Shown: positions 13,613 to 62,675, numbered from the stretch's first letter. The stretch: DNA of 64,000 nt from Ranitomeya imitator (GCF_032444005.1 NC_091283.1:739660001-739724000), one strand, 5' to 3'. Notes: generated from the sequence alone by a model not told the origin. A program made the numbers and translations.

Positions 13613-13892
13613 ATGTAAGCCCCCCCGCATAAACTGAAAATAAATAAAGCGGGGGTCTCATGTCCCCATGGACCTTGCTATGAGCTTAGTTTATTAGTTT
13701 TCCTCACTTTTTAGCAATGTAAATTTCAGTCAGAATCTATGTGATTCGTGACAGACTGTTTTTTTCCAGTTTTTGAGCGCTATTTTTCCCTGCATTTTCA
13801 TTGGTGGAGAGCGTTTTGGCGGTTTTTATTTATTTACAAATCTGACTGACAGCTGTCATTACCTCAGTTGCTGGCGCAAGAGCAACGAAGAG
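13613..13892 (+). repeat. Ngaro repeat A1
   Basis: Direct copy at 18616-18895, offset 5003. Confidence 0.95.
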
Positions 13893-13905
13893 GTACCACG
13901 CTGCC

Positions 13906-15393
13906 ATGGAGAAGCTATTCCAGGAAGTTTTAGCTAGGGCAGGTGGCCAGGATGGCTTAGGCTGGCTAAAAAGCTGCCTAGCAATGAAGGAAACGCCGGT
14001 GGGCACTGAAGTTATCCCTCCTCCTACCGAACCGGAGGCATTCCCCCCACTTTCAAGCCCGGTACCTGCCGCCCAGCCAGCGTCGAGCGCTGTATCGCGC
14101 TCCAGGAGGTCAAGGTCTGTCTCAGCGGCAGCGGCGGATTCTCCGGCGCCCAAGCGTAGCCAACGTGACGCCGGAAATAAACCGTGACGCTGCGCCTCAG
14201 CGAAGTCCCGCAGCCCGGCGAGAGATGTCGGCCGTCGCCCCTTAGATGAACCGGCGACGTCATCTCAAGCAGCCGGAAAGGCAGGAGTGGGGCAGGGCCG
14301 TAAAAGCGCTGCGGTCCCCTCCTGCTCTCTCTCCAGAGCGGCCATCTTTGCATCGGACCTGCAGGGAAGGTCGGCTCCAGCGGCTGCTGCACAGTCCTCA
14401 GAAGATGAAGAGGATCTTCAATCAAGTTCCTTCAGAGAGCCGCGCTCGCCTAATCCCATGGGCTTGAGCGCAAGCATTTCTGGTGAGCGTCGCCGGGAGG
14501 TACAGCCTGACAGGGGTGAGAACATTAATCAAATTTTACTTAATAGTGAATTGAGGGATTTTATCAAATCAGTAGTGTGTGAAGCTATGGGGGATGTTGT
14601 ACCCACTCCCCCTCCCCTTCCCTCATCCGTTCCTAAGATTACTATTGACTCTATGCGTATCGATACGCCTTCTATAGCTTCCATCCCATTAAATCCTTTT
14701 AAAGAGGCTCTAACTTGTGAACTGTCTCCACTTGGTTTCCATTTAAGTTCCTCGGTTAAGGAGCTTATTTGGAACAATAATTTTATCGATATATTTTCTC
14801 TTATCCCTCGCAGAGATCAGCCCCCGAAGTCTGATAAAAAAGAGGACAGAGCAGATTCTGAGGATAGTAGGCGTAACATTAGATCGTTTAACAACTGGAT
14901 ACAAGCCTTTGCTATATACGCTGCAGTTTTGGGGGAGAAATCCCCTAAGCTTTGCAGTAGCTTGTTTCAGCACGTCGATATTATCTTAGAAGCTTATAGA
15001 AATTTCGGCTGCTCTGCTTGGCTTCACTATGATGAGGCTTTTAGGCATAAGCTATCTGTTCACCCTGAGGTTAAATGGGGTACGAAAGATATCGGGTTGT
15101 GGATTAACCTCATGCTGCCGTCAAGACAAGTCGCGGGTAGGCAAACGGTTAATTCCTTTCCTAAAAGAGGCGTCTGCTTCGCCTTTAACGAATCCTTTTG
15201 CAAATGGAGTAATAATTGCCGGTTCAGGCACGAGTGCTCCTTCTGTGGTAATGCCCATCCGATGTCCAAATGCTTTAAGAAGCAGGCAGCCCAGCAATCT
15301 GCAAGTAAGGATCCTAACCCAAAAGGCCCGGACGCCAGTGAATTTGGAAAATATGGTTCACTGGCTAAACAGATTCCCAAACAAGGAGAGTAG
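13906..15393 (+). CDS. Ngaro Gag-like ORF1, interrupted by one in-frame TGA (14185-14187)
   Basis: ORFs 13906-14187 and 14287-15393 share a frame, separated by a single TGA (probably CGA>TGA). The C-terminal zinc finger CFAFNESFCKWSNNCRFRHECSFCGNAHPMSKC is C-x7-C-x5-C-x3-H followed by C-x2-C-x3-H-x4-C. Confidence 0.85.
14480..14488 (+). promoter_or_regulatory. Predicted 5' splice donor CTG|GTGAGC (phase 1) inside gag
   Basis: Close to consensus; falls after the first G of the Gly codon 14482-14484. Confidence 0.65.
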
Positions 15394-16907
15394 TCAGCTC
15401 TTGTTTGAGGGTTTTTATGATGGCTTTCATGTACCCCAGTTCAAAGGGAAGGGTTGCATTATAGTAAATAATTTATCCTCCATTTCTGCTTTTCCAGAAG
15501 TTGCTAGGGAAAAAATCCATAATGAGTTAGTATTAGGTAGGGTGGCTGGCCCTTTTATGTCCCCCCCCTTTTTAAATTTTCGCATCTCACCTCTGGGGGT
15601 CGTACCTAAAAAAGATTCCGGTTCATTTCGTTTAATTCACCATCTTTCGTATCCGCCAGGCCACTCTTTAAATGATGAAGTTGATAAGGAATGTTGTTCA
15701 GTTTCTTACTCTTCCTTTGACGGTGCATTGGATTTGCTAAGGAAATTCGGTTCCTTTGCATTAATGGCGAAATCCGATATTAAATCGGCTTTTAGGATTC
15801 TACCAGTTCACCCTATGGGTTTTAACTCATTAGGTTTCCATTTTGATGGCTGTTTTTTTTTTCGATAAATGCCTCCCAATGGGCTTTTCATTGTCATGCT
15901 TTTACTTCGAGACGTTTTCCGTTTTTTTGCATTGGATTTTACAATCCAACAGTAAGGAAGCAGGGATATTGCACTACCTGGATGATTTCCTTTTCATAGG
16001 TCCTCCTCATTCACTTGTATGTCAGGACACATTTTTTCGAATGTGCTCTCACTTTGGCGTTCCTATCGCGATTGATAAAACTGTTGGCCCTTGTAATCGA
16101 ATTGAATTTTTAGGCATCACAATCGATTCTGAAAAAATGGAAGCTATTCTCCCTGAGGATAAGGTTGCCAAGCTGCGTGCTTCTCTTTCTGAATTTTTGT
16201 CTAAGGATAAAATCTCTCTCAAAGATCTTCAAGCGCTTTTAGGCCTGCTGAACTTTGCTCTTCAGGTAATTCCAATGGGCCGAGTCTTTTCTAGGAGTTT
16301 GTACGAAGCCACCAAAGGTTTTTCTTCACCTAAATGCCATATTCGAGTTCGCTCTGAGCTCAAGGAGGACGCTAGAATTTGGCTGTCATTTTTGTCCGAT
16401 TTTAATTGTAAATCGGTTTTACAATCTCCTTTTATCAATGCGGATTCTATTCCTCTGGTTTTCTCCGCAGATATTTCCTTAGGTGTCAGCTTGGTATGTT
16501 CATCTCATTGGGTTCGCTTGAATTGGCCTGATGATTCCGATATTATCAGGGTCATGAATAATTCTCTGCTCTTAGAGCTTTTTGCAATTTTTTCACTTAT
16601 CTTCATCTGGGGCAAAAACTTGCAAAATTCAAGAATTCTGTTGTTCTCCTCTAACCAAGCAGTCGTTTTTGCCATCAACACCCTTTCTTCAAAGAATCGT
16701 CAGGCCGCAAAGATTTTGAGACAACTGGTTTTTCTATGTTTGAAAAACAACGTATGGCTGAAGGCGAAAGTGGGCTATAGCAAATTTAAATCGTTAACTG
16801 AGATGTTATTGAATAGTCAGTGGACTAATTTTTCCCAACAGGTTCCGCTAGCAGACAAGGAAGCGACCCATTGTCCTCCATCAGTTTGGGACGTGATCTC
16901 AGCCTAG
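15029..16907 (+). CDS. Ngaro reverse transcriptase / RNase H-like ORF, +1 frameshift in a T10 run (15853-15862)
   Basis: Motifs ISPLGVVPKK, FRLIHHLSYP, AKSDIKSAFR, CLPMG and HYLDDFLF. Removing one T joins ORFs 15029-15868 and 15843-16907. The frame overlaps the gag 3' end. Confidence 0.92.
16823..16841 (+). promoter_or_regulatory. Predicted branch point and 3' splice acceptor upstream of YR
   Basis: GACTAATTTTTCCCAACAG|G. The YR frame is closed by TAA 16826-16828 and opens here. Confidence 0.65.
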
Positions 16908-17794
16908 TTCCGCATTTTATTGAAAATTCCCTGTCCAAACGATCGTGGGCTGACTACTCGGCCGCATGGAAAAAATGGTCTGATTTTTGTGTTCTTCACG
17001 GGTTTAATGCATTGACTTCCGACCCTTTTGTTGCTCTGCAATTTGCGGAATCTTTACTTAAGAAGAATTTATCTTACTCTGCGTTAGCAAAATGCTTCGC
17101 AGGAGTCTCCTTTTTCCTGAAGGCCCACGGGGAATCTGCGTTGACTGACCTCCTTCTGGTTAAACAATTCTTGAAGGGCCTAAAACGAGAGAATTTTGTA
17201 CCAGCTCCAGACGTCCCATTTCCCTGTCGTTGCTAAGAAACATTTGTTCAGTGCTGATTAATGTCTGCTCAAACCCAGAGGAAGCACTGTTGTTTAACGC
17301 CATATTCTTAATTTGTTTTTTTGGAGCTCTTAGAGTCGGCGAGATAGTGTCTTATAAGAAAGCTGAGCCATCCGGGCTCAGGCTGGAGGACGTTAAAATT
17401 TTTGATTCCCTCCTTTTAGTGTTTATTAGAAGTTCTAAAACAGATCAAATGGGAAGAGGTAGTGAAATTTGTTTGAAATCTTTTGATGACAAAACTATTT
17501 GCCCAGTTTTTAATTTTTCCAAATGGATTGTGGTTAGGCCTGCGGTGCAGGGCTCGTTGTTTTTGCATAAAGATGAATCACCAGTCACTGTATTTCAGTT
17601 CAATTTTATTTTGAAAAAATGTCTATCTTTTTTGGGAAAGAGTCACCTCAGGATATCCTCTCATTCGTTTAGGATAGGTGCGGCTACGGAAGCCTCTAGA
17701 GCCGGCTTATCTGATGCCAGAATCAAAAAAAATGGGTAGATGGGAATCGAATCGTTTTAAACTGTACGTTCGACATCATTTATATGCTGACTAA
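16842..17794 (+). CDS. Tyrosine recombinase (two frameshifts: -1 near 17204, +1 in the A8 run 17725-17732)
   Basis: Catalytic motifs FFGALRVGE (R), RSSKTDQ (K), SHSFRIGAA (HxxR) and, after repairing the A run, MGRWESNRFKLYVR (W, Y). Stop TAA at 17792-17794. Confidence 0.92.
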
Positions 17795-17812
17795 TTATTT
17801 ATTTTCTTTTAG
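17787..17812 (+). promoter_or_regulatory. Predicted branch point and 3' splice acceptor upstream of the hydrolase
   Basis: CTGACTAATTATTTATTTTCTTTTAG|G. The hydrolase frame is closed by TGA 17788-17790. Confidence 0.7.
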
Positions 17813-18402
17813 GTCCAAATATTGTTTGGATTGTTGGCCATTCCTTTATTTTCTGGGCCCAGAAGAGGGCTAGTCAGCGTTGTTACTCGGAGAATCTGTC
17901 CTTTAACCCTTCCATTACGCAGGTCTACTGGCATAGCATCCGTGGACTGAAGTGGGCTTCTTTGGTGCATGAGCTAAATAATTGTTTGTTGAAATTTCCA
18001 TACCCGGATTTATTAATCATTCATCTTTCTGGGAATGATCTTGGGAAGATCAATACGCATAATTTATTAGCGGCCATGCGGTCTGATCTTATTTTTTTGA
18101 AACAAAAATTTCCATTTTCTTGTCTCGTTTTTTCCGAGATCATTCCCAGACTTTTTTGGCAGCAACAGCAGTTTGCTTTTATGGATAAAATTCGTAAAAG
18201 GGTAAACCGTGAAATGATGAAATTTTTTCCCCTTTTAGGAGGCTTTTCTTTTAGGCATGTGGATTTAGAGGGGTTTTTACCTGGTCTGTTTAGACAAGAT
18301 TTGGTTCACTTGTCCAACATAGGACTTGACATTTTTAATCTGAACTTGGGCAACATAGTTGAAAAATGGCTGTGTGGTTTGGGGGGGCCTCGACTCTGTT
18401 AG
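17813..18402 (+). CDS. SGNH/GDSL-like hydrolase domain, uninterrupted and lacking its own start codon
   Basis: Block I is VWIVGHSF (Ser codon 17842-17844), then IRGLKW, block III HLSGNDLG, and block V RQDLVHL (DxxH). The first Met lies downstream of the nucleophile. Confidence 0.85.
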
Positions 18403-18412
18403 TCTTGGCCTT

Positions 18413-18621
18413 GTGGGATAAATCACCCATGTATGGGTGGATTTGGACATTTGGAATTTTTGGAGAATTTTAAATATGTTATTTCGGAAGTTTATTTATT
18501 GGAAGTATTTTATGGTATTTTATGTAACCCTGAATAAAACCGCACGGCCATTTTATTCCACTTTAAATTAAATCTGTGTCCAGAGTGTTTATTTCGGCAT
18601 GGGTTCTATGGGGACATGTAA
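18413..18621 (+). repeat. Ngaro repeat B1
   Basis: Direct copy at 18948-19143. B1 has 14 extra nt (18598-18611). Confidence 0.93.
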
Positions 18622-18895
18622 GCCCCCCCGCATAAACTGAAAATAAATAAAGCGGGGGTCTCATGTCCCCATGGACCTTGCTATGAGCTTAGTTTATTAG
18701 TTTTCCTCACTTTTTAGCAATGTAAATTTCAGTCAGAATCTATGTGATTCGTGACAGACTGTTTTTTTCCAGTTTTTGAGCGCTATTTTTCCCTGCATTT
18801 TCATTGGTGGAGAGCGTTTTGGCGGTTTTTATTTATTTACAAATCTGACTGACAGCTGTCATTACCTCAGTTGCTGGCGCAAGAGCAACGAAGAG
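18616..18895 (+). repeat. Ngaro repeat A2
   Basis: Copy of 13613-13892. Confidence 0.95.
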
Positions 18896-18947
18896 CCCAC
18901 CCTCCCTCCCTTTATGTCATCGTTCCTCCTGTCGTGTGGTTTTAATC

Positions 18948-19143
18948 GTGGGGATAAATCACCCATGTATGGGTGGATTTGGACATTTGGAATTTTTGGA
19001 GAATTTTAAATATGTTATTTCGGAAGTTTATTTATTGGAAGTATTTTATGGTATTTTATGTAACCCTGAATAAAACCGCACGGCCATTTTATTCCACTTT
19101 AAATTAAATCTGTGTCCAGAGTGTTTATTTCGGGGACATGTAA
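18948..19143 (+). repeat. Ngaro repeat B2
   Basis: Copy of B1, ending GGGGACATGTAA. Confidence 0.93.
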
Positions 19144-19342: not shown

Positions 19343-20341
19343 GGCCAGTCTCACACGTCCCAATAATTCCGGTACCGGAAAAATCGGTACCGGAATTATC
19401 CGTGTCCGTGTGCTTACCATGAACTTCAGTGTGGCACACGTGCGGCAGCGGTGTGCCGCCTGTGTGCCAACTGGGTACCACACGGACCATGCAGGAGACA
19501 GTGCTACAAGTAAGCGCTGTCCCCTGCATCTGGTGCTGAAGCCGCCATTCATATCTTCTCTCCAGCAGCGTTCGCTAGAGAAAAGATATGAAAAATCCTT
19601 TTTTTTTTTTTTCGTGTTTAAAATAAAGATCCCTGTCCCCTCCCCCCTCCTGTGCGCCCGGCCGCTGTTACTAAAATACTCACCCGGCTCCCTCGAAGCG
19701 TCCTCTCCGCGCCGCACCATCTCCTGTATGAGCGGTCACGTGGTGCCACCCATTACAGTCATGAATATGCGGCTCCACCTCTATGAGAGGTGGAGCCGCA
19801 TATTCATGACTGTAATGGGGGGCACCATGTGACCGCTCATACAGGAGAAGCTGGCGCTGAGAGGACGCTGTGAGGGAGCCGGCTGAGTATTTTGTTAACA
19901 GCGGGCGGGCGCACAGGGGGTGGGAGGGGGGTGGGGACAGGGATCTTTATTTTAAACACGAAAAAAAAAGGATTTTTCATATCTTCTCTCTAGCGAACGC
20001 TGCTGGAGAGAAGATATGAATGGCGGCTTCAGCACCACGCTGGGAGGACAGCACTTACTGTAGCGCTGTCTCCTGCACGGCACACGGACTGCACACGGAC
20101 AGCGTCCGTGTGCGGTACGTGTTTTACACGGACCCATTGACTTTAATGGGTCCGTGTAATCCGTGCGCTCCCACGAACACTGACATGTCTCCGTGTTTTG
20201 CACATGGACACACGGTCCGTGAAAACACGCTGACATGTGCAGAGACACATTGATTTCAATGTGTCTACGTGAGTCAGTGTCTCTGGTATGTGAGGAAACT
20301 GACACCTCACGTACCGGAGCCACTGACGTGTGAAACCGGCC
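19343..20341. mobile_element. Harbinger-like non-autonomous element with long internal inverted repeats
   Basis: TIRs GGCCAGTCTCACACGTC and GACGTGTGAAACCGGCC. Segment 19500-19760 is inverted at 19810-20070. Confidence 0.75.
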
Positions 20342-22515: not shown

Positions 22516-24102
22516 CCGTACATACTCGAGTATAAGCCGACCCGAGTATAAGCCGACCCCCCTAATTTTGCCACAAAAAACTGGGAAAACTTATTGACTC
22601 GAGTATAAGCCTAGGGTGGAAAATGCAGCAGTTACCGGTAAATTTCAAAAGCAAAAATAGATACAAATAAAAGTAAAATTAATTGAGACATCAGAAGGTT
22701 AAGTGTTTTTGAATATCCATATTGAATCAGGAGCCCCATATAATGCTCCATAAAGTTTGATGGGCCCCATTAGATGCTCCATATTAAAATATGTCCCATA
22801 TAATGCTGCATAAAGGGTAATAAGGGCTTCATAAGATGCTCCATAGAGATATTTGCCCCATATAATGCTGCACAAGCGCTATGGCCCCATAAGATGCTCC
22901 ATACAGTCACTTGCCCCATATAGTGCTGTACAAGTGTTATGGCCCCATACAGATGCTCCGCACAGCTACTTGCCCCATATAATGCTGCACAAGTATGGCC
23001 CCATAAGATGCTATGCACAGCTACTTGCCCCATATAATGCTGCACAAGTGTTATGGCCCCATAAGATGCTCTGCACAGCTACTTGCCCCATATAATGCTG
23101 CACAAGCGTTATGGCCCCATAAGATGCTCTGCACAGCCACTTGCCCCATATAATGCTGCACAAGTATGGCCCCATACAGATGCTCCGCACAGCCACTTGC
23201 CCCTTATAATGCTGCACAAGTATGGCCCCATAAGATGCTCTGCACAGCTACTTGCCCCATATAATGCTGCACAAGTATAGCCCCATAAGATGCTCCGCAC
23301 AGCCACTTGCCCCTTATAATGCTGCACAAGTATGGCCCCATAAGATGCTCTGCACAGCCACTTGCCCCATATAATGCTGCACAAGTATGGCCCCATACAG
23401 ATGCTCCGCACAGCCACTTGACCCATATAATGCTGCACAAGTATGGCCCCATAAGATGCTCTGCACAGCTACTTGCCCCATATAATGCTGCACAAGTGTT
23501 ATGGCCCCATAAGATGCTCCGTACAGTCACTTGCCCCATATGCTGTGGCTGCCATAAAAAAAAATCACATACTCACCTGTCTTCGCTCAGGACCCCGGCA
23601 CTGTCACCTGCTCCTTGTGCGGCTCCGTCTTCGGCACTGACGCTCAGCAGAGGGCGCGCACTGACTACGTCACTGCGCCCTCTCACCTGAGCGTCACTGC
23701 TGAAGACAGAGCGACACCCGGACCGAGAAGCAGGTGACTATCGCGCAGCGCTCCCCCTCCCCGTATACTTACCTGGTCCTGGCGCTGCGTCCCTGCTTCT
23801 TCCCCGGCGCTGCATCTTCTTCCTGTATTGAGCGGGCAGCGTCACCGCTCATATACAGTAATGAATATGCGGCTCCACCTCTATGGGGAGTGGAGCCGCA
23901 TATTCATTACTGTATATGAGCGGTGCCATGTGACCACTCAATACAGGAAGAAGATGCAGCGCTGGAAGAAGCAGGGACTGCAGGGACCGCGCCGGGAGCA
24001 GGTAAGTATAATTACACAGCCCCCGCTCCCCCTCCCGTGCCGACCCCCGGGTATGACAAAAAAATGGGCTGAAAATCTCGGCTTATACTCGAGTATATAC
24101 GG
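22516..24102. mobile_element. Tc2-like MITE nested in the Tc1 element
   Basis: TA-CCGTACATACTCGAGTATAAGCCGA...TCGGCTTATACTCGAGTATATACGG-TA. Confidence 0.85.
22740..23545. repeat. Minisatellite, ~55-58 bp dimeric unit
   Basis: The unit GCCCCATATAATGCTGCACAAGTAT-GGCCCCATAAGATGCTCTGCACAGCTACTT is repeated about 13 times. Confidence 0.95.
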
Positions 24103-27010: not shown

Positions 27011-28912
27011 CATAAAGCTGAAAGTCTGTGTGTGTGTGCGTGCGTGCGTGCGCACGCGCGTATGTCCGGGATTGGCATCTGCACCGTCGCAGCTACAGCC
27101 ACAAAATTTTGCACAGTCACACGTCTGGACCCCGAAAGCATCATAGGCTGTGTTGTGAAGCAAAAGTTTAACCCCGCGCGTTCCAATTCACCAAACAAAT
27201 TTGCCCCATCTACATAATGGGGAAAAGTGAAAGGAAAAGTATTGGAGGCAAATTGACAGCTGCCAAATGTGAACAAGATGACAGCAATGGCGTCAAAGAG
27301 TATATACCGTACAGTTGCTAAGGTGGGGTCACAACATGGGATACTCACCACACACGGGGATATGAACACACACACAAGTTGCGCCACACACTACCACGTG
27401 CTTGAACACATATACCACCCTCAGCACACATTTCACCACACATACACCAACCTCGCCACATAAAAGTCGAAACACTAAAGTCGCCACTCCAAACTCACCA
27501 TGCACAAAATTCGCCACATGCAAAACTAGGCTCAGTCAAAACTCGCCACACGTGCAAAACTCACCTCATGGAAAACTCGCCACACGCAAAACTTGCACAC
27601 GTGGAAAAATTGCCACATGCCCAAAAGTTGCAACACATGCAAAAGTTGCCTCACACAAAACTTGCACCTACTCAAAACGCACCACACATAAAACTCGCCA
27701 CGCGCAAAACTCGCCATGCGCAAAACTTGCTTCACACAACTTGCTACACTAACCTGTCACATGCAACTCGACACACAAAAAGTTGCTACACGCATGTTGC
27801 CACACAAAACTCATCTCACAAAAGTCGCTACAAGCATGTCGCCACACGCAACTCAGCACACACAACTTGACACATGAAACTCGCCCTAAAATACACACAA
27901 GTCTGGTATTATCCTTTAAAAATAAAAATCTGATTAATAAGCAGACAAACTACAAGAGCAACAAATGTACCATATAGGAAACACGGCAGCTGTCAGTCAC
28001 ATGACGTGTCTATTATGTGCATGTGTGAGCTAATATATACTGCCAGGGGGAGGGCTTCCTGTTGGCTGGGGATTTATCAGGCTGCCAATTTAGCTTACAA
28101 ATACTGAGGCAAAAATACTGACACAATAACGAGTGAACGAGGTCTAATACAGGAGGAGATGACACACAGGTACATACTATATACAGGGGAGATGACACAC
28201 AGATATATACTATGTAGAGGAGCAGATGACACGCAGGTATATACTATATACAGGAGGAGATGACTTACAGGTATATACTATATACAGGAGGAGATGACAT
28301 ACAGGTACATACTATATAAAAGAGCAGATGACATACAGCAGGTACATACTATATACAGGGGAGATGACATACAGGTATATACTATATACAGGAGGAGATG
28401 ACATACAGCAGGTATATACTATTTACAGGGGAGATGACATACAGATATATACTATATACAGGGGAGATGACATACAGGTATATACTATATACAGGAGATG
28501 ATATACAGGTGTATACTATATATAAGGGAGATGACAAACATGTATATAATGAGGGGAAAATGAGAGGTGTGAGGTGAAAATGAGAGTTGTGAGGTGAAAA
28601 TGAAAAGGTGTGAGTGCAAAATGAGAGGATTGAGGGAAAATAGTGGAGTGATCGGAAAATGACAGATGTTAGGTCGAAATGACAAGTTTTAGGGGGGAAT
28701 GAGAGGAGTGAGGGGGGAATGAGAGGAGGGTGAAAATAAGAGGAGTGAGGGGGAAAATGAGAGGTGTGAGGGAGAAAATGAGAGATGTGAGAGGGAAAAT
28801 GAAAGATGTGAAGTGCTAAATGAGAGGCGTGATGGGAAAATAAGAGAAGTGAGATGCTATAACTAACCACAGATATTTACTATGCCCAGGCAATGCCGGG
28901 CTCTTCAGCTAG
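27010..28912 (+). mobile_element. Non-autonomous Helitron-like element containing three minisatellites
   Basis: A 3' hairpin GCCCAGGCAATGCCGGGC (28884-28901) is followed by CTAG|T (28909-28913). Arrays lie at about 27440-27880, 28140-28540 and 28550-28850. The 5' TC terminus is not seen. Confidence 0.75.
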
Positions 28913-41506: not shown

Positions 41507-41950
41507 TAGGGTTAGGGCTAGGGTTAGGGCTAGGGCTAGGGTTAGGGCTAGTGCTAGNNNNNNNNNNNNNNNNNNNNNNNNNNNNNNNNNNNNNNNNNNN
41601 NNNNNNNNNNNNNNNNNNNNNNNNNNNNNNNNNNNNNNNNNNNNNNNNNNNNNNNNNNNNNNNNNNNNNNNNNNNNNNNNNNNNNNNNNNNNNNNNNNNG
41701 GGACTAGGGTTAGGGTTAGGGCTAGGGCTAGGGTTAGGGCTAGGGTTAGGGCTAGGGTTAGGGTTGGGGCTAGGGTTAGGGCTAGGGTTAGGGTTAAGGC
41801 TACAGTTAGGGTTGGGGCTAAAGTTAGGGTTAGGGTTTGGATTACATTTACCGTTGGGAATAGGGTTGGGATTAGGGTTAGGGGTGTGTCTGGGTTAGAG
41901 GTGTGGTTAGGGTTACCGTTGGGATTAGGGTTAGGGGTGTGTTTGGATTA
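41507..41950 (+). repeat. Interstitial telomere-like array (TTAGGG/CTAGGG) spanning assembly gap 41558-41699
   Basis: GGGTTA and GGGCTA hexamers lie on both sides of 142 Ns. Confidence 0.9.
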
Positions 41951-41959
41951 GGGTTTCAG

Positions 41960-43760
41960 TTATAATTGGGGGGTTTCCACTGTTTAGGCACATCAGGGGG
42001 ATCTCCAAACGCGACATGGCGACCGATCTCGATTCCATCCAATTCTGCATTGAAAAAGTAATACAGTGCTCCTTCCCTTCCGAGCTCTCCCGTGTGCCCA
42101 AACAGGAGTTTACCCCAACATATGGGGTATCAGCGTACTCAGGACAAATTGGGCAACAACTTTTGGGGTCCAATTTCTCCTGTTACCCTTGGGAAAATAC
42201 AAAACTGGGGGCTAAAAAATAATTTTTGTGGGAAAAAGAGAGATTTTTTATTTTCACGGCTCTGCGTTATAAACTGTAGTGAAACACTTGGGGGCTCAAA
42301 GTTCTCACAACACATCTAGATAAGTTCGTGGGGGGGTCTAGTTTCCAATATGGGGTCACTTGTGGGGGTTTCTACTGTTTAGGTATATTAGGGGCTCTGC
42401 AAACGCAATGTGACGCCTGCAGACCATTCCATCTAAGTCTGCATTCCAAATGGCGCTCCTTCCCTTCCGAGCCCTCCCATGCGCCCAAACGCTGGTTCCC
42501 CCCCACATATGGGGTATCAACGCACTCAGGACAAATTGGACAACAACTTTCGGGGTCCAATTTCTCCTTTTACCCTCGAGAAAATACAAAACTGGGGGCT
42601 AAAAAATAATTTTGAGGGGAAATTTTTTTTTTTATTTTCACGGCTCTGCGTTATAAACTGTAGTGAAATACTTGGGGGCTCAAAGTTCAAACAACACATC
42701 TAGATAAGTTCCTTGGGGGGTCTAGTTTCCAATATGGGGTCACTTGTGGGGGGTTTCTACTGTTTAGGTACATTAGGGGCTCTGCAAACACAATGTGACG
42801 CCTGCAGACCATTCCATCTAAGTCTGTATTCCAAATGGCGCTCCTTCCCTTCCGAGCCCTCCCATGCGCCCAAACGCTGGTTCTCCCCCACATATAGGGT
42901 ATCAGCGCACTCAGGACAAATTGCACAACAACTTTTGGGGTCCAATTTCTCCTGTTACCCTCAGGAAAATACAAAACTGGGGGCTAAAAAATTATTTTTG
43001 TGGGAAAAAATTTTTGTTTTATTTTTACGGCTCTGCATTATAAACTTCTGTGAAGCTCTTATTGGGTCAAAGTGCTCACCACACATCTAGATAAGTTCCT
43101 TAGGGGGTCTACTTTTCAAAATGGTGTCACTTGTGGGGGGTTTCAATGTTTAGGTACATCAGTGGCTCTCCAAACGCAACATGGCGTCCCATCTCAATTC
43201 CTGTCAATTTTGCATTGAAAGGTCAAACGGCGCTCCTTCCCTTCCGAGCTCTCCCATGCGCCCAAACAATGGTTTACCCCCACATATGGGGTATCAGAGT
43301 ACTCAGGACAAATTGTGCCACAACTTTTGTGGTCCAATTTCTTCTCTTACCATTGGGAAAATAAAAAATTGGGGGCGAAAAGATAATTTTTGTGAAAAAA
43401 AATGATTTTTTATTTTTACGGTTCTGCATTATAAACTTCTGTGAAGCACTTGGTGGGTCAAAGTGCTCACCACATCTCTAGATAAGTTCCTTAGGGGGTC
43501 TACTTTCCAAAATGGTGTCACTTGTGGGGGGTTTCAATGTTTAGGCACATCAGTGGCTCTCCAAACGCAACATGGCGTCCCATCTCAATTCCAGTCAATT
43601 TTGCATTGAAAAGTCAAATGGCGCTCCTTCCCTTCCGAGCTCTGCCATGCGCCCAAACTGTGGTTAACCCCCACATATGGGGTATCAGCGTACTCAGGAC
43701 AAATTGTACAACAACGTTTGGGGTCCATTTTCTCCTGTAACCCTTGGTAAAATAAAACAA
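41960..43760. repeat. ~385-391 bp tandem satellite, about 4.5 units
   Basis: Marker CTAGATAAGTTC at 42316, 42700, 43087 and 43478. Confidence 0.9.
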
Positions 43761-45929
43761 ATTGGAGCTGAAGTAAATTTTTTGTGAAAAAAAGTTAAAT
43801 GTTAATTTTTATTTAAACATTCCAAAAATTCCTGTGAAGCACCTGAAGGGTTAATAAACTTCTTGAATGTGGTTTTGAGAACCTTGAGGGGTGCAGTTTT
43901 TAGAATGGTGTCACACTTGGGTATTTTCTATCATATAGACCCCTCAAAATGACTTCAAATGAGATGTGGTCCCTAAAATAAAATGGTGTTGTAAAAATGA
44001 GAAATTGCTGGTCAACTTTTAACCCTTATAACTCCCTAACAAAAAAAAATTTTGGTTCCAAAATTGTGCTGATGTAAAGTAGACATGTGGGAAATGTTAC
44101 TTATTAAGTATTTTGTGTGACATATCTCTGTGATTTAATTGCATAAAAATTCAAAGTTGGAAAATTGCGAAATTTTCAAAAGTTTCGCCAAATTTCCGTT
44201 TTTTTCACAAATAAACGCAGGTAATATCAAAGAAATTTTACCACTATCATGAAGTACAATATGTCACGAGAAAACAATGTCAGAATCACCAGGATCCGTT
44301 GAAGCGTTCCAGAGTTATAACCTCATAAAGGGACAGTGGTCAGAATTGTAAAAATTGGCCCGGTCCATAACGTGCAAACCACCCTTGGGGGTAAAGGGGT
44401 TAAAGAGACATCAATGGTAACCATTACATGACCCTGCACAATCAACAATCGTGACCACAGATGAAAGTTTTTCCCTCTTCTATTCATCCAGTCATGGCAG
44501 TAAAGTCATCAGTACTTTCTAGAAGAAGTGAAAACAACAAAAAAGTTGCCAGTCATGAGTCTTAAATGAGCATTTTTTTTTTTTTTTACTTAATAACACA
44601 TAAAGTAATGAGAGGACAGGCATTGGCTAGGTACACACAGGCCAGGAGTGGATTTCTTGGGGAAGGAAACACATGCGGACACTATTTATTAATGGAAGAT
44701 TTGCTGCACAATTTCAGTGTCGGTTTGCAAATGAACATTTGTGTGGCTTGGATTGTGACACCTGAAATTTATTTTCTCCATCCTTGACTATTTGCCTACA
44801 TGTCCTGCTTGTATAAGCATTTGTATACCTTGCTAATAAAAAAAAAGACTCTCCAAGTCAATATATCTAGTGCCGTGTAATTAATACATACAGGCCTACA
44901 GGTTATATGCTAGCAGTGTACATGATATGGAGGTAATTGGAGATTTCCTGTATCGCAATTATTGTCTTACATAGTTTATTAGCGGCAGTAAAATAGGTAT
45001 ACGTTTCAGTTCTCATTAAGGGCTCATACAGATGTCAGTTTTTCTCATACAAAAGCTATCTTTGTTTTTCACAGATAGAATTTCTACCTATTATATTCTA
45101 GTGGACTGTTCACACATTTATGTATTTTTGCAGACCGAGTATTCCACATAGAATCATGGAGTCTTATCCAATCTTGACCTGATTCTTGGATCAAAATCGC
45201 CAATGCAAGTCAATGCAAGGTCAGTGAAAAAATCAAACAGTCTGGAAAAAAATGAAAAAAATGGACAGCACATGGATGGCATCCAAGAGCTGTCTGTTTT
45301 TGACAAACTGTTTGATATGAGAAGCTATAGAAACATCCATTTTTTTTCACCTGAGAAAGAATAATGATAATCTGACAAAACAGTGATGAAACTCTGATAT
45401 AACACACTGACGAAGCTCAGGCCAATTTTGCCTATGAGAAAAATGACTGGTGTCTGAATTAGGCCTAAGGCAGATACTTTAGATCGGCTGGAGGTCTTAA
45501 AGAGGTGGTTCCCTTTCAGAAAACTTTTGCCTATAAGCACAGTTGGTTGTAAAAAAAATTGTGCTCCCTCTCCGGGTCCAGCACCGTGTCTGCGCCGCTG
45601 CCTTTATCAGCATAAACCACTGGGCTCAGTGATTTGCTGTTGATGTGATGTCATGGCTGCACCCAACAACAGAGATCAGAGCAGTAGAAAGACCCAACAT
45701 TGGACCCGGGGAGACTAGGTAAAGTGTAGTTTGCTATTTTTTTACATAGATGCATGCATATAGGAAAAAGTTTTCTGAAAGGAAACAAACCCTGTAAAGC
45801 TGGGAAAATATTGAAACAAAATTATACTGAACCAGTAGTAATACAGTGACATGTAAAAGTTTGGCCAGCCCTGGTCAAAATTATGCTATTGTGAACAGTT
45901 AAGCGAGTTGAAGATTAAATGATCTCTAA

Positions 45930-50707: not shown

Positions 50708-51590
50708 CTGTCATGGCCAAAAGTATTCACACCCCTGCAATTCTGTCAGATAATACTCAGTTTCTTACTGAAAATGATTGCGAACACAAATTATTTGGTA
50801 TTATTATCTTCATTTAATTTGTCTTAAATGAAAAAAACACAAAAAGAACTGTCCTAAAGCCAAATTGGACATAATTCCACACCAAACATAAAAAAGGGGG
50901 TGGACAAAAGTATTGACACTGTTCGAAAAATCATGTGATGCTTCTCTAATTTGTGTAATTAACAGCACCTGTAATTTACCTGTGGCACCTAACAGGTGTT
51001 GGCAATAACTAAATCACACTTGCAGCCAGTTGACATGGATTAAAGTTGACTCAACCTCTGTCCTGTGTCCTTGTGTGTACCACATTGAGCATGGAGAAAA
51101 GAAAGAAGACTAAAGAACTGTCTGAGGACTTGATAAACCAAATTGTGAGGAAGCATGAGCAATCTCAAGGCTACAAGTCCATCTGCAAAGACCTGAATGT
51201 TCCTGTGTCTACCGTGCGCAGTGTCATCAAGAAGTTTAAAGCCCATGGCACTGTGGCTAACCTCCCTATAAGTGGACGGAAAAGAAAAATTGACAAGAGA
51301 TTTCAACGCAAGATTGTGTGGATGTTGGATAAAGAACCCCGACTAACATCCAAACAAGTTCAGGCTGCCCTGCAGTCCGAGGGTACAACAGGGTCAACCC
51401 ATATTATCCGTCGGCATCTGAATGAAAATGGACTGTATGGTAGGAGACCCAGGAAGACCCCACTTCTTACCCCGAGACATAAAAAAGCCATGCTGGAGTT
51501 TGCCAAAATTTACCTGAAAAGGCCTAAAACTTTTTGGAAGAATGTTCTCTGGTCAGATGACACAAAAGTAGAGCTTTTTGAGCAAAGGCA
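50708..51590 (+). mobile_element. 3'-truncated Tc1-like transposon
   Basis: TA followed by a TIR-like CTGTCATGGCCAAAAGTATTCACACCCC, then the transposase 5' half. Confidence 0.85.
51091..51590 (+). pseudogene. Tc1 transposase N-terminal half (HTH domains to the first catalytic Asp region)
   Basis: MEKRKKTKELSEDL...VPVSTVRSVIKKFK...GRKRK...WKNVLWSDDTKVELF, then runs into unrelated sequence. Confidence 0.88.
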
Positions 51591-53157
51591 TCTTACAGAT
51601 GCACCTTTTCTGGGGTGGCTGGGGGCAGATGTTTTTAGCCGGGGGGGCCAATAACCATGGTCCCTCTCTAGGCTATTAATATCTGCCCTCAGTCACTGGC
51701 TTTCCCACTCTGGAGGAGAAAATTGCACTGGAGCCCACACAAGTTTTTTCCGTGCTTTAACCCTTTATTTTAACACCTAGAGCTCCAAAGTTTTGCGCAC
51801 ACACACTACTAACATAATTAGTGAGGAATATGTACAAATATAATGGATATGAAATGGTTTACTGTATGTAAACCATGTCTCATATCCTGTCGGGTTTGAA
51901 AAGGAGTTAGCAAAAGCCGACAATTGAATTACCAGGTTTTATGCTGTCTAGCTCTTTATTAAATATAAATATATATATATATGTGTCTAGCTTTGGAGAA
52001 AATATTGCATCCTCGCATTGAATACAGATCACTGTTCAGGAACTTTTCTGCCTATCTCGGCCGTAAAAACGGACTGTATTTTTATATGTTAGGTCTGACC
52101 CCGGCCTAAAGCAGGAAAAGTTGTCAGCTGGCACAAGACCGTAACTATGCAAATTGCATACTTGTGGCCGCATGATCGCTTGCTTGATCAGACAACTGAG
52201 TGTAATCCTGACAGTGTGCACATAGAAGATTATTAGGATTTACAGTCACATAGCTTGACTAGAGAAATTAAGCTGAAGTCTGGTAAACTCCTTTAAATAA
52301 TACAAATTATATGATAAAATTATTTGTGCAACTATAAATGTCATGTTACATTGTATCCCAAAGTACTGCATTTATATGTTTAATGTGTGCAACTGAACTG
52401 TATGTCTGTATAATGTTTTATCTGCACAAAAATTAAAAGTAATTGACAGCAACACCCAACCATCATATTACAATAATGTACAGAGAGGACTGACAGCATG
52501 TGCTGCCGCTACTTAGAAACCAGTAGCATGTGCAGAACATGTGTATCTCAACATGATAACCCCATGATCGCCATGTATCTTAAGATGCTTTAAAGAGCTA
52601 CAGTGTTTTGTACATTTATAGGAACACCACGGGATATGGCATAAATGTATAATAGATGCAAATCTCACCAAGGGGTGTCGTATCTATCTAAAATACAGGG
52701 CTTCATTGCATGCTGCTTTTTAATGGAGCAGTGGTCAGAGTATGCATGCAAATGAATTGGAATTCTCGAACGTTTCCCCTATTTCAAGAACGACCTGTTC
52801 TTGAAATAGATGCATATTTGGCATATCCTTTGAATTTTCCATAGATTTACTGTAGATGTCAACAAAGATATAACTCTATGCCCCTCCATCTACACTGTGG
52901 CAATACTGGGTTTAATGAGATCCAATTGATGGAGAGTGATCGACTTCTCTGGTGCTGCTGTCCGGTTGGAATCCCGCAGGACAGTGACAGGAATGTGTTG
53001 GATGAATGAACTTTCTCACTGAAGATTTTATTAATCAGTGAAATAGTCTGTATTATCATTAGTTTGTTTTATTTATTATTATAAGAAATAACATGTGTAG
53101 GCACAGCATGTTTGCGAGCTGAGCCAACATCTTCATCAGATCCATACGTAAACATTA

Positions 53158-57537: not shown

Positions 57538-57665
57538 NNNNNNNNNNNNNNNNNNNNNNNNNNNNNNNNNNNNNNNNNNNNNNNNNNNNNNNNNNNNNNN
57601 NNNNNNNNNNNNNNNNNNNNNNNNNNNNNNNNNNNNNNNNNNNNNNNNNNNNNNNNNNNNNNNNN
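57538..57665. other. Assembly gap (128 N)
   Basis: Run of Ns. The right flank 57666-58000 matches 35230-35580. Confidence 0.99.
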
Positions 57666-62659: not shown

Positions 62660-62675
62660 CACTAGCCAGACCCTG

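What the first reader, a model, noticed from the sequence alone, without database searches (positions are those of the whole stretch)
17813..18402. SGNH hydrolase cargo with intact S-N-D-H residues
This is the only undisrupted ORF in the element: GHS nucleophile, GND oxyanion block and DLVH triad block. Hydrolase domains are reported in some vertebrate Ngaro elements and in ORF1p of some LINEs (the ZfL2-1 esterase binds lipids), but their role in YR retrotransposons is unknown to me. Fusion to a basic, disordered Gag leader would mimic that LINE ORF1p layout and suggests particle-membrane or deacylation functions.
Basis: partly seen in the sequence, partly recalled or inferred. Interest (0 to 1): 0.7.

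Follow-up and report, generated by a model that had tools for sequence, protein, structure and literature searches.

The report
Spliced esterase exon of a Ngaro retrotransposon
The stretch is the last exon of a frog-type Ngaro jumping gene and encodes a complete esterase of a kind already known in these elements; comparison with relatives suggests it is made by splicing it onto the start of the element's Gag gene.

Summary
Window 17813-18402 (+) is an open 196-codon stretch with all SGNH catalytic blocks intact: GHS, block II Gly, GND and DLVH. An AlphaFold model (pLDDT 88) matches PAF-acetylhydrolase, GDSL and TesA esterases. The stretch lies at the 3' end of a Ngaro tyrosine-recombinase retrotransposon (13613-19133) that has perfect split direct repeats.

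An SGNH ORF after the YR gene is already described for amphibian Ngaro elements, with function unknown, so the object is a new member of a known kind.

What I add:
- The ORF has no ATG before the catalytic Ser and starts just after a pyrimidine-tract AG acceptor.
- Annotated models in five frog loci that I reconstructed, and about 17 in all, splice the first 125-200 Gag codons to this exon in phase 1. A second isoform splices the same leader to the YR ORF.
- The window keeps matching donors (14515|14516, 14482|14483) and both acceptors (16842, 17813).
- The exon evolves under strong purifying selection (omega 0.06-0.11), as strong as for RT and YR.

This copy is itself defective: a stop in the leader and frame changes in RT and YR. 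The open SGNH exon is not significant here (P=0.63). Biochemical role and RNA-level splicing remain untested.

The parts
13613..13892 (+). Split direct repeat A1 (280 nt), the 5' end of the Ngaro element
   Evidence: 100% identical to A2 at 18616-18895
13906..14515 (+). Leader exon: the first ~193-204 codons of the gag-like ORF, from the ATG at 13906. It carries an in-frame TGA at 14185-14187 in this copy and an internal in-frame ATG at 14458.
   Evidence: The N-terminal helix MEKLFQEVLARAGGQDGLGWLKSCL matches the leaders of annotated leader-SGNH proteins. Pieces align along the ~200-aa leaders of Ranitomeya P0025/P0026. pI is 9.4-9.5 and 48-54% of residues are P/S/A/G.
14483..14521 (+). Two phase-1 splice-donor candidates: TTTCTG|GTGAGC (exon end 14482) and ACAGGG|GTGAGA (exon end 14515)
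   Evidence: The 14482 donor is the best-scoring candidate in gag (9.0 bits). The 14515 donor scores 7.5 bits, third after one at 15304 (8.1 bits). 14515|14516 is the positional homologue of the annotated Ranitomeya donor GAGGG|GTGAGACT. All five reconstructed relatives use G|GTGAG in phase 1.
14516..15393 (+). Rest of the gag-like ORF (conserved core and C-terminal Cys/His-rich motif); intronic in the spliced mRNAs
   Evidence: Aligned with gag ORFs of L001-L004; tblastn 46-53% identity
15029..16907 (+). RT/RNase H region in two frames, with the frame change inside a T10 run at 15853-15862
   Evidence: It is a single 567-593 aa ORF in intact relatives L001, L002 and L010. The Pfam RVT_1 model did not reach threshold on the window pieces.
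16829..17739 (+). Tyrosine recombinase region. The frame opens at 16829, a candidate phase-1 acceptor aatttttcccaacag|GT gives an exon start at 16842, and the frame changes within 17189-17236.
   Evidence: Pfam Phage_integrase E=1.6e-5. The acceptor is homologous in position to those that give the 449 and 467 aa leader-YR isoforms of L001 and L002.
17791..17812 (+). Pyrimidine tract and AG acceptor just upstream of the SGNH exon
   Evidence: A pyrimidine-rich tract plus AG in the same phase lies 23-32 nt before the GHS Gly codon in 8 of 8 loci, three of them unannotated Logan contigs. In L010 it lies 14 nt before, still in phase 1.
17813..18402 (+). SGNH hydrolase exon (the finding): 2 bases completing a split Gly codon, 195 codons and a TAG stop
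17836..17844 (+). Block I, G-H-S (Ser nucleophile)
17944..17946 (+). Block II Gly (oxyanion hole), within RGLKW
   Evidence: It aligns with the Gly of FPGARV in the ZfL2-1 esterase in the profile alignment. That paper gives G165 as an oxyanion residue (PMC3905857).
18031..18039 (+). Block III, G-N-D (Asn oxyanion)
18298..18309 (+). Block V, D-L-V-H (Asp and His of the triad)
18415..18597 (+). Split direct repeat B1 (183 nt), with AATAAA at 18533
   Evidence: 100% identical to B2; poly(A) signals
18616..18895 (+). Split direct repeat A2
18951..19133 (+). Split direct repeat B2, the 3' end of the element, with AATAAA at 19069

Best explanation
The stretch is the 3'-terminal coding exon of a Ngaro (tyrosine-recombinase) retrotransposon of the tetrapod lineage that carries an SGNH esterase gene after YR.

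Shown: the exon encodes a complete, catalytically equipped SGNH-fold domain, and the family keeps it under purifying selection as strong as for RT and YR.

Inferred from comparative sequence: the exon has no start codon of its own. It is probably expressed from a spliced subgenomic mRNA in which a donor in the variable part of the gag leader (14515|14516 or 14482|14483, phase 1) joins the acceptor at 17812|17813. The product would be a fusion of the Gag N-terminal leader (a short conserved helix followed by a low-complexity linker) with the esterase. The same donor appears to be joined alternatively to an acceptor at the start of the YR ORF (16841|16842). The element would then express its downstream genes as a complex retrovirus does. 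Gag, YR and the esterase would share one N-terminal module, which could bring them into the same particle.

Most likely biochemical role (inference by analogy only): a short-acyl or lipid esterase with a basic surface that acts at membranes or within the RNP, as proposed for the esterase of CR1/L2 LINE ORF1 proteins.

This particular copy is young, because its repeats are identical, but it is defective: there is a stop in the leader and frame changes in RT and YR. Its open esterase exon reflects youth and small size, not selection at this locus.
For: Fold and residues:
- AF2 model pLDDT 88.4, pTM 0.85.
- Foldseek PDB hits 2hsj, 8ik1, 1wab/3dt6 (PAF-AH Ib), TesA and acetyl-xylan or sialate esterases, all at probability 1.00; 4c1b at rank 50.
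- The profile of the family finds 4c1b (ZfL2-1 esterase) as its best PDB sequence hit, aligning blocks II, III and V.
- PF13472 is hit by 7 of 13 family members.

Element:
- Split direct repeats at 100% identity.
- Collinear gag-RT-YR-SGNH in L001-L004, L008 and L010.
- L001 and L002 carry the same repeat architecture.

Splicing:
- Exact two-exon reconstructions of database proteins in Bufo bufo, B. gargarizans, Eleutherodactylus coqui, Pelobates cultripes and Ranitomeya imitator, all phase 1 with G|GTGAG donors and YAG acceptors.
- The introns contain the gag core, RT and YR.
- The acceptor is conserved in phase in three unannotated contigs and in the window.
- The window donors are in phase, and 14515 is homologous to the Ranitomeya donor.
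- There is no ATG upstream of GHS in the window or in L001.
- Leader-YR isoforms are reproduced by the same donor, with the equivalent acceptor in the window, L003 and L008.
- The same leader appears on YR and on SGNH proteins in Rhinoderma and, with a different leader, in squamates.
- An SGNH exon of this type is annotated as an alternative terminal exon of a host gene in lacertids, in phase 1.

Selection:
- NG86 dN/dS is 0.10 for the Bufo pair, against 0.13 for YR, 0.13 for the gag core and 0.10-0.24 for RT.
- Window versus Ranitomeya: 0.108, against 0.098 for YR and 0.095 for RT.
- ML omega is 0.058 and 2dlnL is 590 against omega=1.

Charge: pI of the SGNH part is 8.8-9.5 in all five lineages tested.
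Against: - No RNA evidence could be examined. The spliced models come from annotation pipelines that always choose in-frame GT-AG pairs.
- The independent support is limited to site and phase conservation in the window and three unannotated contigs, and to the lack of a start codon.
- Donor and acceptor positions are not fixed. The window has two candidate donors 33 nt apart. The Ranitomeya acceptor lies 9 nt from the window's. No YR acceptor was found in the Pelobates copy.
- L002-L004 have an in-frame ATG in the open stretch upstream of the acceptor, so unspliced initiation is not excluded there.
- The window copy itself misses Pfam PF13472 at E<=1.
- Some lineages have lost catalytic residues while the ORF stays open (L008/P0017: S, N and H all replaced; P0009: S and H; lacertid TSG101 exon: H). 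This hints that catalysis is not always the selected property.
- Synonymous sites are near saturation for most pairs, so omega values are approximate.
- The lipid or membrane role rests wholly on analogy.
Confidence: 0.75

Rival explanations
1. The SGNH ORF is translated from the unspliced genomic RNA, by reinitiation, stop-codon readthrough or frameshifting after YR. On this view the spliced gene models are annotation artefacts.
For: The Xenopus study describes four ORFs with overlapping frames and does not mention splicing (PMC9210276). In the window and in L010 the SGNH frame is the same as the YR C-terminal frame. L002-L004 have an in-frame ATG in the open stretch before the acceptor.
Against: In the window three stops (17737-17739, 17758-17760, 17788-17790) separate YR from the exon, and there is no ATG before the catalytic Ser. 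In L001 YR and SGNH are in different frames. A pyrimidine tract plus AG is conserved in one phase in every locus, although the surrounding sequence is not conserved. The donor G|GTGAG is conserved in phase 1 in a poorly conserved part of gag.
Confidence: 0.1
2. The domain works mainly as a non-catalytic binding module for membrane, RNA or protein, as the OSK domain of Oskar does. Esterase chemistry would be dispensable.
For: Open ORFs with catalytic residues replaced occur in L008/P0017 (GNA, GAD, DEVT), in P0009 (GHE, His to Leu) and in the lacertid TSG101 exon (His to Leu). Liposome binding by the ZfL2-1 esterase did not need the active site (PMC3905857). The basic pI is conserved.
Against: Block I Ser is kept in 11 of the 13 sequences that reach it, and block III Asn and block V His in about 18 of 21, including the window and all the fully open elements examined (L001, L002, L010). 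That pattern is what is expected if catalysis is selected in active lineages.
Confidence: 0.1
3. This copy still yields a working esterase. The mRNA would be spliced and translation would start at the internal in-frame ATG at 14458, downstream of the premature stop, giving a short-leader SGNH protein.
For: ATG 14458 lies 8 or 19 codons before the two donors. Bufo bufo models P0002 and P0064 start at an analogous internal Met 7 codons before the donor. The A and B repeats are identical, so promoter and poly(A) signals may be intact.
Against: The upstream ATG at 13906 has a good initiation context and would be used first, ending at the TGA after 93 codons. Nothing shows that this copy is transcribed. 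An open exon is expected by chance (P=0.63).
Confidence: 0.15
4. The ORF is a host gene or a domesticated copy at this locus, not part of a transposon.
For: Domestication of this exon type does seem to occur elsewhere, in the lacertid TSG101 isoforms.
Against: Here it sits inside perfect Ngaro split repeats, directly after the element's YR. Its nearest relatives are full elements.
Confidence: 0.02

Closest known systems
Amphibian Ngaro-like elements with a Hydro-SGNH ORF (e.g. Xenopus DIRS-53_XT and DIRS-54_XT; Goodwin and Poulter 2004 as cited in PMC9210276)
   Same: Split direct repeats A1...B1-A2-B2 at 100% identity, gene order gag, RT/RH, YR and then an SGNH hydrolase ORF, an anuran host range for the closest relatives, and a function described as unproven.
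   Different: Repeat lengths are 280 and 183 nt here against 236 and 152 nt in DIRS-53_XT. The published description treats SGNH as a fourth overlapping ORF. The comparative evidence here points to expression as a spliced Gag-leader fusion, together with a leader-YR isoform. I did not find that in the papers I could read. The two founding reviews were not available.
Esterase domain of CR1/L2-clade LINE ORF1 proteins (ZfL2-1 ORF1p, PDB 4c1b)
   Same: An SGNH fold with S, G, N, D and H, carried by a retrotransposon. It is the best PDB hit of the family profile, aligning blocks II, III and V. The domain is basic. It is joined to an N-terminal non-enzymatic module of the element's structural protein. 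ZfL2-1 is an active acetylesterase and binds acidic phospholipids (PMC3905857).
   Different: The sequence link is weak (E=0.028). The structural match is only rank 50, with TM 0.43-0.54, perhaps because 4c1b is domain-swapped. The element class (YR, not LINE) and the gene position (3' end, not ORF1) both differ. The partner is a short helix plus a disordered linker, not a coiled coil. Fusion is by splicing, not by a continuous ORF.
Cytosolic PAF acetylhydrolase Ib catalytic subunits and bacterial GDSL/TesA esterases
   Same: They are the best structural matches (2hsj, 1wab, 3dt6, 8ik1, 4jgg; TM 0.6-0.7), with the same catalytic blocks. UniRef names some Xenopus relatives 1-alkyl-2-acetylglycerophosphocholine esterase.
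   Different: Sequence identity is 8-18%. phmmer found no PDB match for the window protein. There is no evidence on substrate.
Env-type subgenomic splicing of retroviruses and some LTR retrotransposons
   Same: A donor near the start of gag is joined to acceptors in front of downstream genes. The full-length RNA would serve for gag and RT, and the spliced RNAs for the accessory genes.
   Different: The donor lies inside the gag coding region, so the products are N-terminal Gag fusions. The genes served are a recombinase and an esterase, with no signal peptide or membrane anchor seen. This is inferred from sequence, not shown on RNA.

Membership tests
SGNH/GDSL hydrolase superfamily | Block I Ser nucleophile in a G-x-S context near the N-terminus | tested here: met
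   GHS at 17836-17844. The Ser is kept in 11 of the 13 relatives that reach the N-terminus.
SGNH/GDSL hydrolase superfamily | Block II Gly and block III Asn (G-x-N-D), the oxyanion hole | tested here: met
   Gly at 17944-17946 and GND at 18031-18039. They align to the FPG and GTND segments of the ZfL2-1 esterase (residues named in PMC3905857).
SGNH/GDSL hydrolase superfamily | Block V D-x-x-H (Asp and His of the triad) | tested here: met
   DLVH at 18298-18309. It aligns to DGLH of 4c1b.
SGNH/GDSL hydrolase superfamily | Three-layer alpha/beta/alpha fold with a five-stranded parallel sheet | tested here: met
   AF2 model pLDDT 88.4 with alternating strands and helices. More than 150 PDB matches at E<=0.001, and the 50 listed are nearly all SGNH/GDSL esterases or scaffolds of that fold.
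SGNH/GDSL hydrolase superfamily | Match to a curated family model (Pfam PF13472 Lipase_GDSL_2) | tested here: inconclusive
   The window protein has no hit at E<=1. Seven of 13 aligned relatives hit it, best 1.2e-8.
SGNH/GDSL hydrolase superfamily | Ester hydrolysis activity | not testable with these tools
   Needs an enzyme assay.
Ngaro superfamily of YR retrotransposons (order DIRS) | Split direct repeats: A1 at the 5' end and B1-A2-B2 at the 3' end, with A1=A2 and B1=B2 | tested here: met
   A1 and A2 are 280 nt and B1 and B2 are 183 nt, both 100% identical. The definition is from PMC9210276.
Ngaro superfamily of YR retrotransposons (order DIRS) | Tyrosine recombinase gene in place of an integrase | tested here: met
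   Pfam Phage_integrase E=1.6e-5, at 25.2 bits just under the 27.1 cut-off. Identity to the YR ORFs of relatives that carry PF00589 is 30-45%. The gene is broken by a frame change in this copy.
Ngaro superfamily of YR retrotransposons (order DIRS) | RT/RNase H gene | tested here: met
   There is no Pfam hit on the two window pieces. They align at 41-55% over their length to single RT ORFs of relatives, and the L008 RT ORF carries PF00078.
Ngaro superfamily of YR retrotransposons (order DIRS) | No methyltransferase domain (present in DIRS-like and PAT-like elements) | tested here: met
   No such Pfam hit in any piece. There is no room for an extra domain between RT/RH and YR.
LINE ORF1p esterase class (CR1, L2, RTEX) | Esterase is part of ORF1p of a non-LTR element, next to a coiled coil | tested here: not met
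   The host element is a YR retrotransposon, and the domain is the last gene, after YR. The leader is a short helix plus a low-confidence linker.
LINE ORF1p esterase class (CR1, L2, RTEX) | Specific sequence relatedness to LINE esterases | tested here: inconclusive
   It is the best PDB hit of the family profile, but at E=0.028.
Spliced subgenomic expression (retrovirus-like) | Conserved in-phase donor and acceptor sites flanking the skipped genes | tested here: met
Spliced subgenomic expression (retrovirus-like) | Spliced RNA observed | not testable with these tools
   No transcript data were at hand. The database models may rest on RNA-seq, but I could not check this.

The most novel reading that the evidence does not exclude
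Tetrapod Ngaro elements express their two downstream genes by alternative splicing from a single donor inside the gag leader. The recombinase and the esterase would both be made as fusions to the Gag N-terminal module, a packaging or targeting device not described for YR retrotransposons in the literature I could search. The same ready-made phase-1 acceptor has let a host gene capture the esterase exon: lacertid lizards annotate TSG101 (ESCRT-I) isoforms in which the UEV and proline-rich regions end in a Ngaro-type SGNH domain.
Probability: 0.4. Interest if true: 0.6.

Novelty: new member of a known kind. Interest (0 to 1): 0.42.

Why it matters
The hydrolase of Ngaro elements has been listed as 'function unknown' since the elements were described. 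Three results give concrete handles on it. The exon is as constrained as RT and YR. It has no start codon of its own. It is probably delivered as a Gag-leader fusion from a spliced mRNA.

The resulting tests are direct:
- look for the junction reads;
- test whether the shared leader brings the esterase and the recombinase to Gag;
- test esterase activity and lipid binding.

If the splicing is real, it would also explain how a eukaryotic element with four genes translates the last two. It would add a second, independent case, besides the CR1/L2 LINEs, of a retrotransposon joining an SGNH esterase to its structural protein.

For this window itself the result is ordinary: one recent, defective copy of a known element type.

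Tried and rejected
- Single-sequence Pfam and PDB sequence searches of the window protein gave nothing useful. Only alignment-based and structure-based searches worked.
- The Rfam scan of the window found nothing.
- The BFVD fold search gave only generic phage and giant-virus SGNH domains. No viral haemagglutinin-esterase was among the 50 best matches, so I dropped an envelope or receptor-destroying reading. There is also no signal peptide or membrane anchor in the leader.
- A search for other copies in the window found only this one, so within-genome dN/dS across copies could not be done. I used inter-lineage comparisons instead.
- I first took 14482|14483 as the donor. Comparison with the closest relative showed that 14515|14516 is the homologous one, and both remain possible.
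- The newt proteins P0062 and P0063 are a different, more distant SGNH family with another N-terminus, and I set them aside.
- Goodwin and Poulter 2004 and Poulter and Butler 2015 are not held, so I cannot exclude that splicing is discussed there.
- P0006 and P0051 had no locus on record, so no lacertid dN/dS could be computed.
- I did not identify the host species. The nearest relatives are dendrobatid (Ranitomeya), at about 70% nucleotide identity.

Full report
**What is at the coordinates.**
The frame through 17812-18402 on the + strand is open from 17791 to a TAG at 18400-18402. It is therefore an exon start, not a codon boundary.

The encoded 195 residues carry the following motifs:
- GHS at 17836-17844;
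- a block II Gly within RGLKW at 17941-17955;
- (S)GND at 18028-18039;
- DLVH at 18298-18309.

No ATG precedes the catalytic Ser. The first in-frame Met lies beyond block III.

**Is it an SGNH hydrolase?**
Pfam and a PDB sequence search with the single sequence gave nothing. A word search found 20 relatives. All those that carry a species name are from frogs, at 45-55% identity, and some carry PF13472. In the alignment the catalytic positions are invariant or nearly so.

An AlphaFold2 model built on that alignment has mean pLDDT 88.4 and pTM 0.85. Foldseek against the PDB returns only SGNH/GDSL-type proteins at the top: a putative PAF acetylhydrolase (2hsj), bovine brain PAF-AH Ib, EstL5, TesA, and acetyl-xylan and sialate esterases. 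The ZfL2-1 LINE ORF1p esterase (4c1b) is at rank 50.

A profile of the family finds 4c1b as its best PDB sequence match (E=0.028), aligning blocks II, III and V. Seven of 13 members hit PF13472.

**The element.**
Two pairs of perfect direct repeats frame the region:
- A1 at 13613-13892 equals A2 at 18616-18895;
- B1 at 18415-18597 equals B2 at 18951-19133.

This A1...B1-A2-B2 layout defines Ngaro elements (PMC9210276). Between the repeats lie four genes:
- a gag-like ORF from ATG 13906;
- RT/RH (15029-16907);
- a tyrosine recombinase (16829-17739; Pfam Phage_integrase E=1.6e-5);
- the SGNH exon.

All are collinear with full elements from Bufo bufo (L001), Eleutherodactylus coqui (L002), B. gargarizans (L003), Pelobates cultripes (L004), a Logan contig (L008) and Ranitomeya imitator (L010). 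L001 and L002 show the same repeat architecture.

In L001, L002 and L010 gag, RT and YR are each single open frames. In the window there are three lesions:
- gag has an in-frame TGA at 14185-14187;
- RT changes frame inside a T10 run at 15853-15862, and a homopolymer length error in the assembly cannot be excluded;
- YR changes frame within 17189-17236.

With three lesions in 3834 bases, an intact 590-base exon is expected 63% of the time. 'Only undisrupted ORF' is therefore true but carries no signal. The identical repeats indicate a recent insertion. The lesions were then either inherited from a defective source copy or are partly assembly errors (inference).

**What is already known.**
Published descriptions state that amphibian Ngaro elements carry an ORF with a Hydro-SGNH domain after YR, 'with no proven function'. 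Xenopus DIRS-53_XT and DIRS-54_XT are given as examples (PMC9210276; also PMC7192593 and PMC6681497). The object is therefore a new member of a known kind.

**How the exon is probably expressed.**
Five of the first hits are 320-350 residues long. They begin with a leader (MEELLRKLIQRAESSGGEAWLQRCL...) that matches the start of the window's gag ORF (MEKLFQEVLARAGGQDGLGWLKSCL).

I fetched the loci and reconstructed the models exactly. In Bufo bufo, B. gargarizans, E. coqui, Pelobates and Ranitomeya the protein is reproduced by two exons:
- the first 125-201 codons of gag, ending in phase 1 at a G|GTGAG donor;
- the SGNH exon, starting after a YAG acceptor a few codons before GHS.

The 3.3-4.8 kb intron holds the gag core, RT and YR. 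Because annotation pipelines always pick in-frame GT-AG pairs, I looked for independent tests.
1. The acceptor, a pyrimidine tract plus AG in the same phase, is present 23-32 nt before the GHS Gly codon in the window and in three unannotated Logan contigs, although the surrounding sequence differs.
2. In the window the best-scoring donor in all of gag is TTTCTG|GTGAGC at 14482|14483, and ACAGGG|GTGAGA lies at 14515|14516. Both are in phase 1 and so in frame with 17813. The second is the positional homologue of the Ranitomeya donor.
3. The donor lies in the poorly conserved linker of gag, between a conserved N-terminal helix and the conserved core, yet the GGTGAG is kept.
4. The window and L001 have no start codon for the exon.
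5. An SGNH exon of this type is annotated as an alternative terminal exon of the TSG101 gene in lacertid lizards, again in phase 1 and with a NAGNAG pair of acceptors. This is what a functional acceptor would allow.

**A second acceptor.**
The other products recorded for L001 (449 aa) and L002 (467 aa) are reproduced by joining the same leader exon to a pyrimidine-tract CAG acceptor 19-31 nt after the YR frame opens. An AG sits at exactly the predicted base and there is no internal stop.

The window has the equivalent site (aatttttcccaacag|GT, exon start 16842, 13 nt after the frame opens, phase-1 compatible). L003 and L008 have it too, but no such site was found in L004.

In Rhinoderma darwinii, leader-YR proteins (P0067-P0070) and leader-SGNH proteins (P0022, P0023) share the same leader. 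In squamates a different leader (MPPKK...) heads both SGNH proteins (Anolis) and YR proteins (Pogona, Eublepharis). Seventeen of the 40 SGNH-search hits of at least 300 residues carry the anuran-type leader helix.

I found no mention of splicing in Ngaro elements in the searchable literature. The two founding papers are not held.

**Handling of the spliced model.**
For the window I handled the spliced model exon by exon, by reference, and left out the joined step. No search or fold used window exon 1 joined to exon 2. The fold of a whole fusion used the natural database protein P0003. Inside scripts I did concatenate exons of the public loci. For four SGNH models this was to check that they reproduce the database proteins. 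For the two YR isoforms of L001 and L002 it was to check their recorded lengths.

**Selection.**
- For the two Bufo lineages (dS about 1), NG86 dN/dS is 0.10 for SGNH, 0.13 for YR, 0.13 for the gag core, 0.10-0.24 for RT and 0.25 for the leader.
- For the window against its nearest relative, Ranitomeya L010 (72% protein identity), it is 0.108 for SGNH, 0.098 for YR, 0.095 for RT and 0.42 for the leader.
- A codon model on eight sequences gives omega 0.058. Fixing omega at 1 costs 2dlnL=590.

Synonymous sites are near saturation for most pairs, so the values are approximate. Neutral evolution is nonetheless excluded. Within-genome comparison of copies was not possible, because the window holds one copy.

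**The leader.**
In the fold of P0003, residues 15-125 have pLDDT below 50, and only short N-terminal helices are predicted. This is consistent with disorder.

The leader pI is 9.4-9.5 in the window and 9.6-9.7 in Bufo, but 5.0-5.3 in E. coqui and Pelobates. 'Basic' is therefore not a conserved property. The SGNH part is basic in all five lineages (8.8-9.5).

**Function.**
Nothing here tests chemistry. The structural neighbours are short-acyl or lysophospholipid esterases. The ZfL2-1 esterase hydrolyses p-nitrophenyl acetate and binds acidic phospholipids through surface charge (PMC3905857). By analogy, I take a membrane- or RNP-associated esterase, brought to Gag by the shared leader, as the most likely role, with low confidence.

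Against a purely catalytic role, some lineages keep the ORF open with catalytic residues replaced (L008/P0017, P0009 and the lacertid exon).

**Housekeeping.**
- None of the fetched contigs looked human.
- The N runs at 41558-41699 and 57538-57665 were left as they are.
- The large representative-protein search was not used.

Noticed in passing
L009:15850-16440 (Podarcis raffonei TSG101 locus); proteins P0040-P0044, P0051, P0052: Lacertid lizards (Podarcis, Lacerta, Zootoca) annotate TSG101 isoforms in which the UEV domain and proline-rich region are followed by a Ngaro-type SGNH domain (about 39% identical to the window's). It is encoded by a single alternative terminal exon inside a TSG101 intron, with a phase-1 NAGNAG acceptor. 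Block V His is replaced by Leu. No gag, RT or YR remnant is detectable nearby. This looks like exon capture, possibly domestication. I found no paper on it.
   Followed up: partly
L008:3545-4120 (Logan contig) and P0009: An otherwise open Ngaro element whose SGNH ORF is open but has Ser, Asn and His all replaced (GNA, GAD, DEVT). P0009 has lost Ser and His. These may be pseudo-enzyme lineages or recent decay.
   Followed up: partly
window 16829-16842: A second candidate acceptor lies at the start of the YR frame. It matches the leader-YR isoforms annotated in Bufo bufo and Eleutherodactylus coqui, so the recombinase also seems to be made as a Gag-leader fusion.
   Followed up: yes
window 58286-62662 (-): An uninterrupted 1458-aa Ty3/gypsy-type gag-pol ORF (capsid, protease, RT, RNase H, integrase, chromodomain), apparently an intact chromovirus-like LTR retrotransposon.
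   Followed up: partly
window 51046-51654 (+): A 202-aa ORF with Tc1/Sleeping Beauty-type transposase HTH domains only. It is probably a fragment of a Tc1/mariner transposon.
   Followed up: no
window 41967-43793, 22830-23541 and 28147-28846: Tandem arrays: a 391-bp unit x4.7 next to an N run, a 55/111-bp unit x12.6 at 91% identity, and 33-bp and 20-bp units.
   Followed up: no
window 18598-18619 and 19134-19143: The 10-mer GGACATGTAA occurs at the B1/A2 junction (18609-18618) and again just after B2 (19134-19143). GTAA is also the first four bases of A1. This may mark the recombination site of the circular intermediate.
   Followed up: no
window 19568-20000: Nested long inverted repeats (arms of 40-77 nt, 88-98% complementary) lie just downstream of the element. 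They may be a hairpin-forming or foldback repeat.
   Followed up: no
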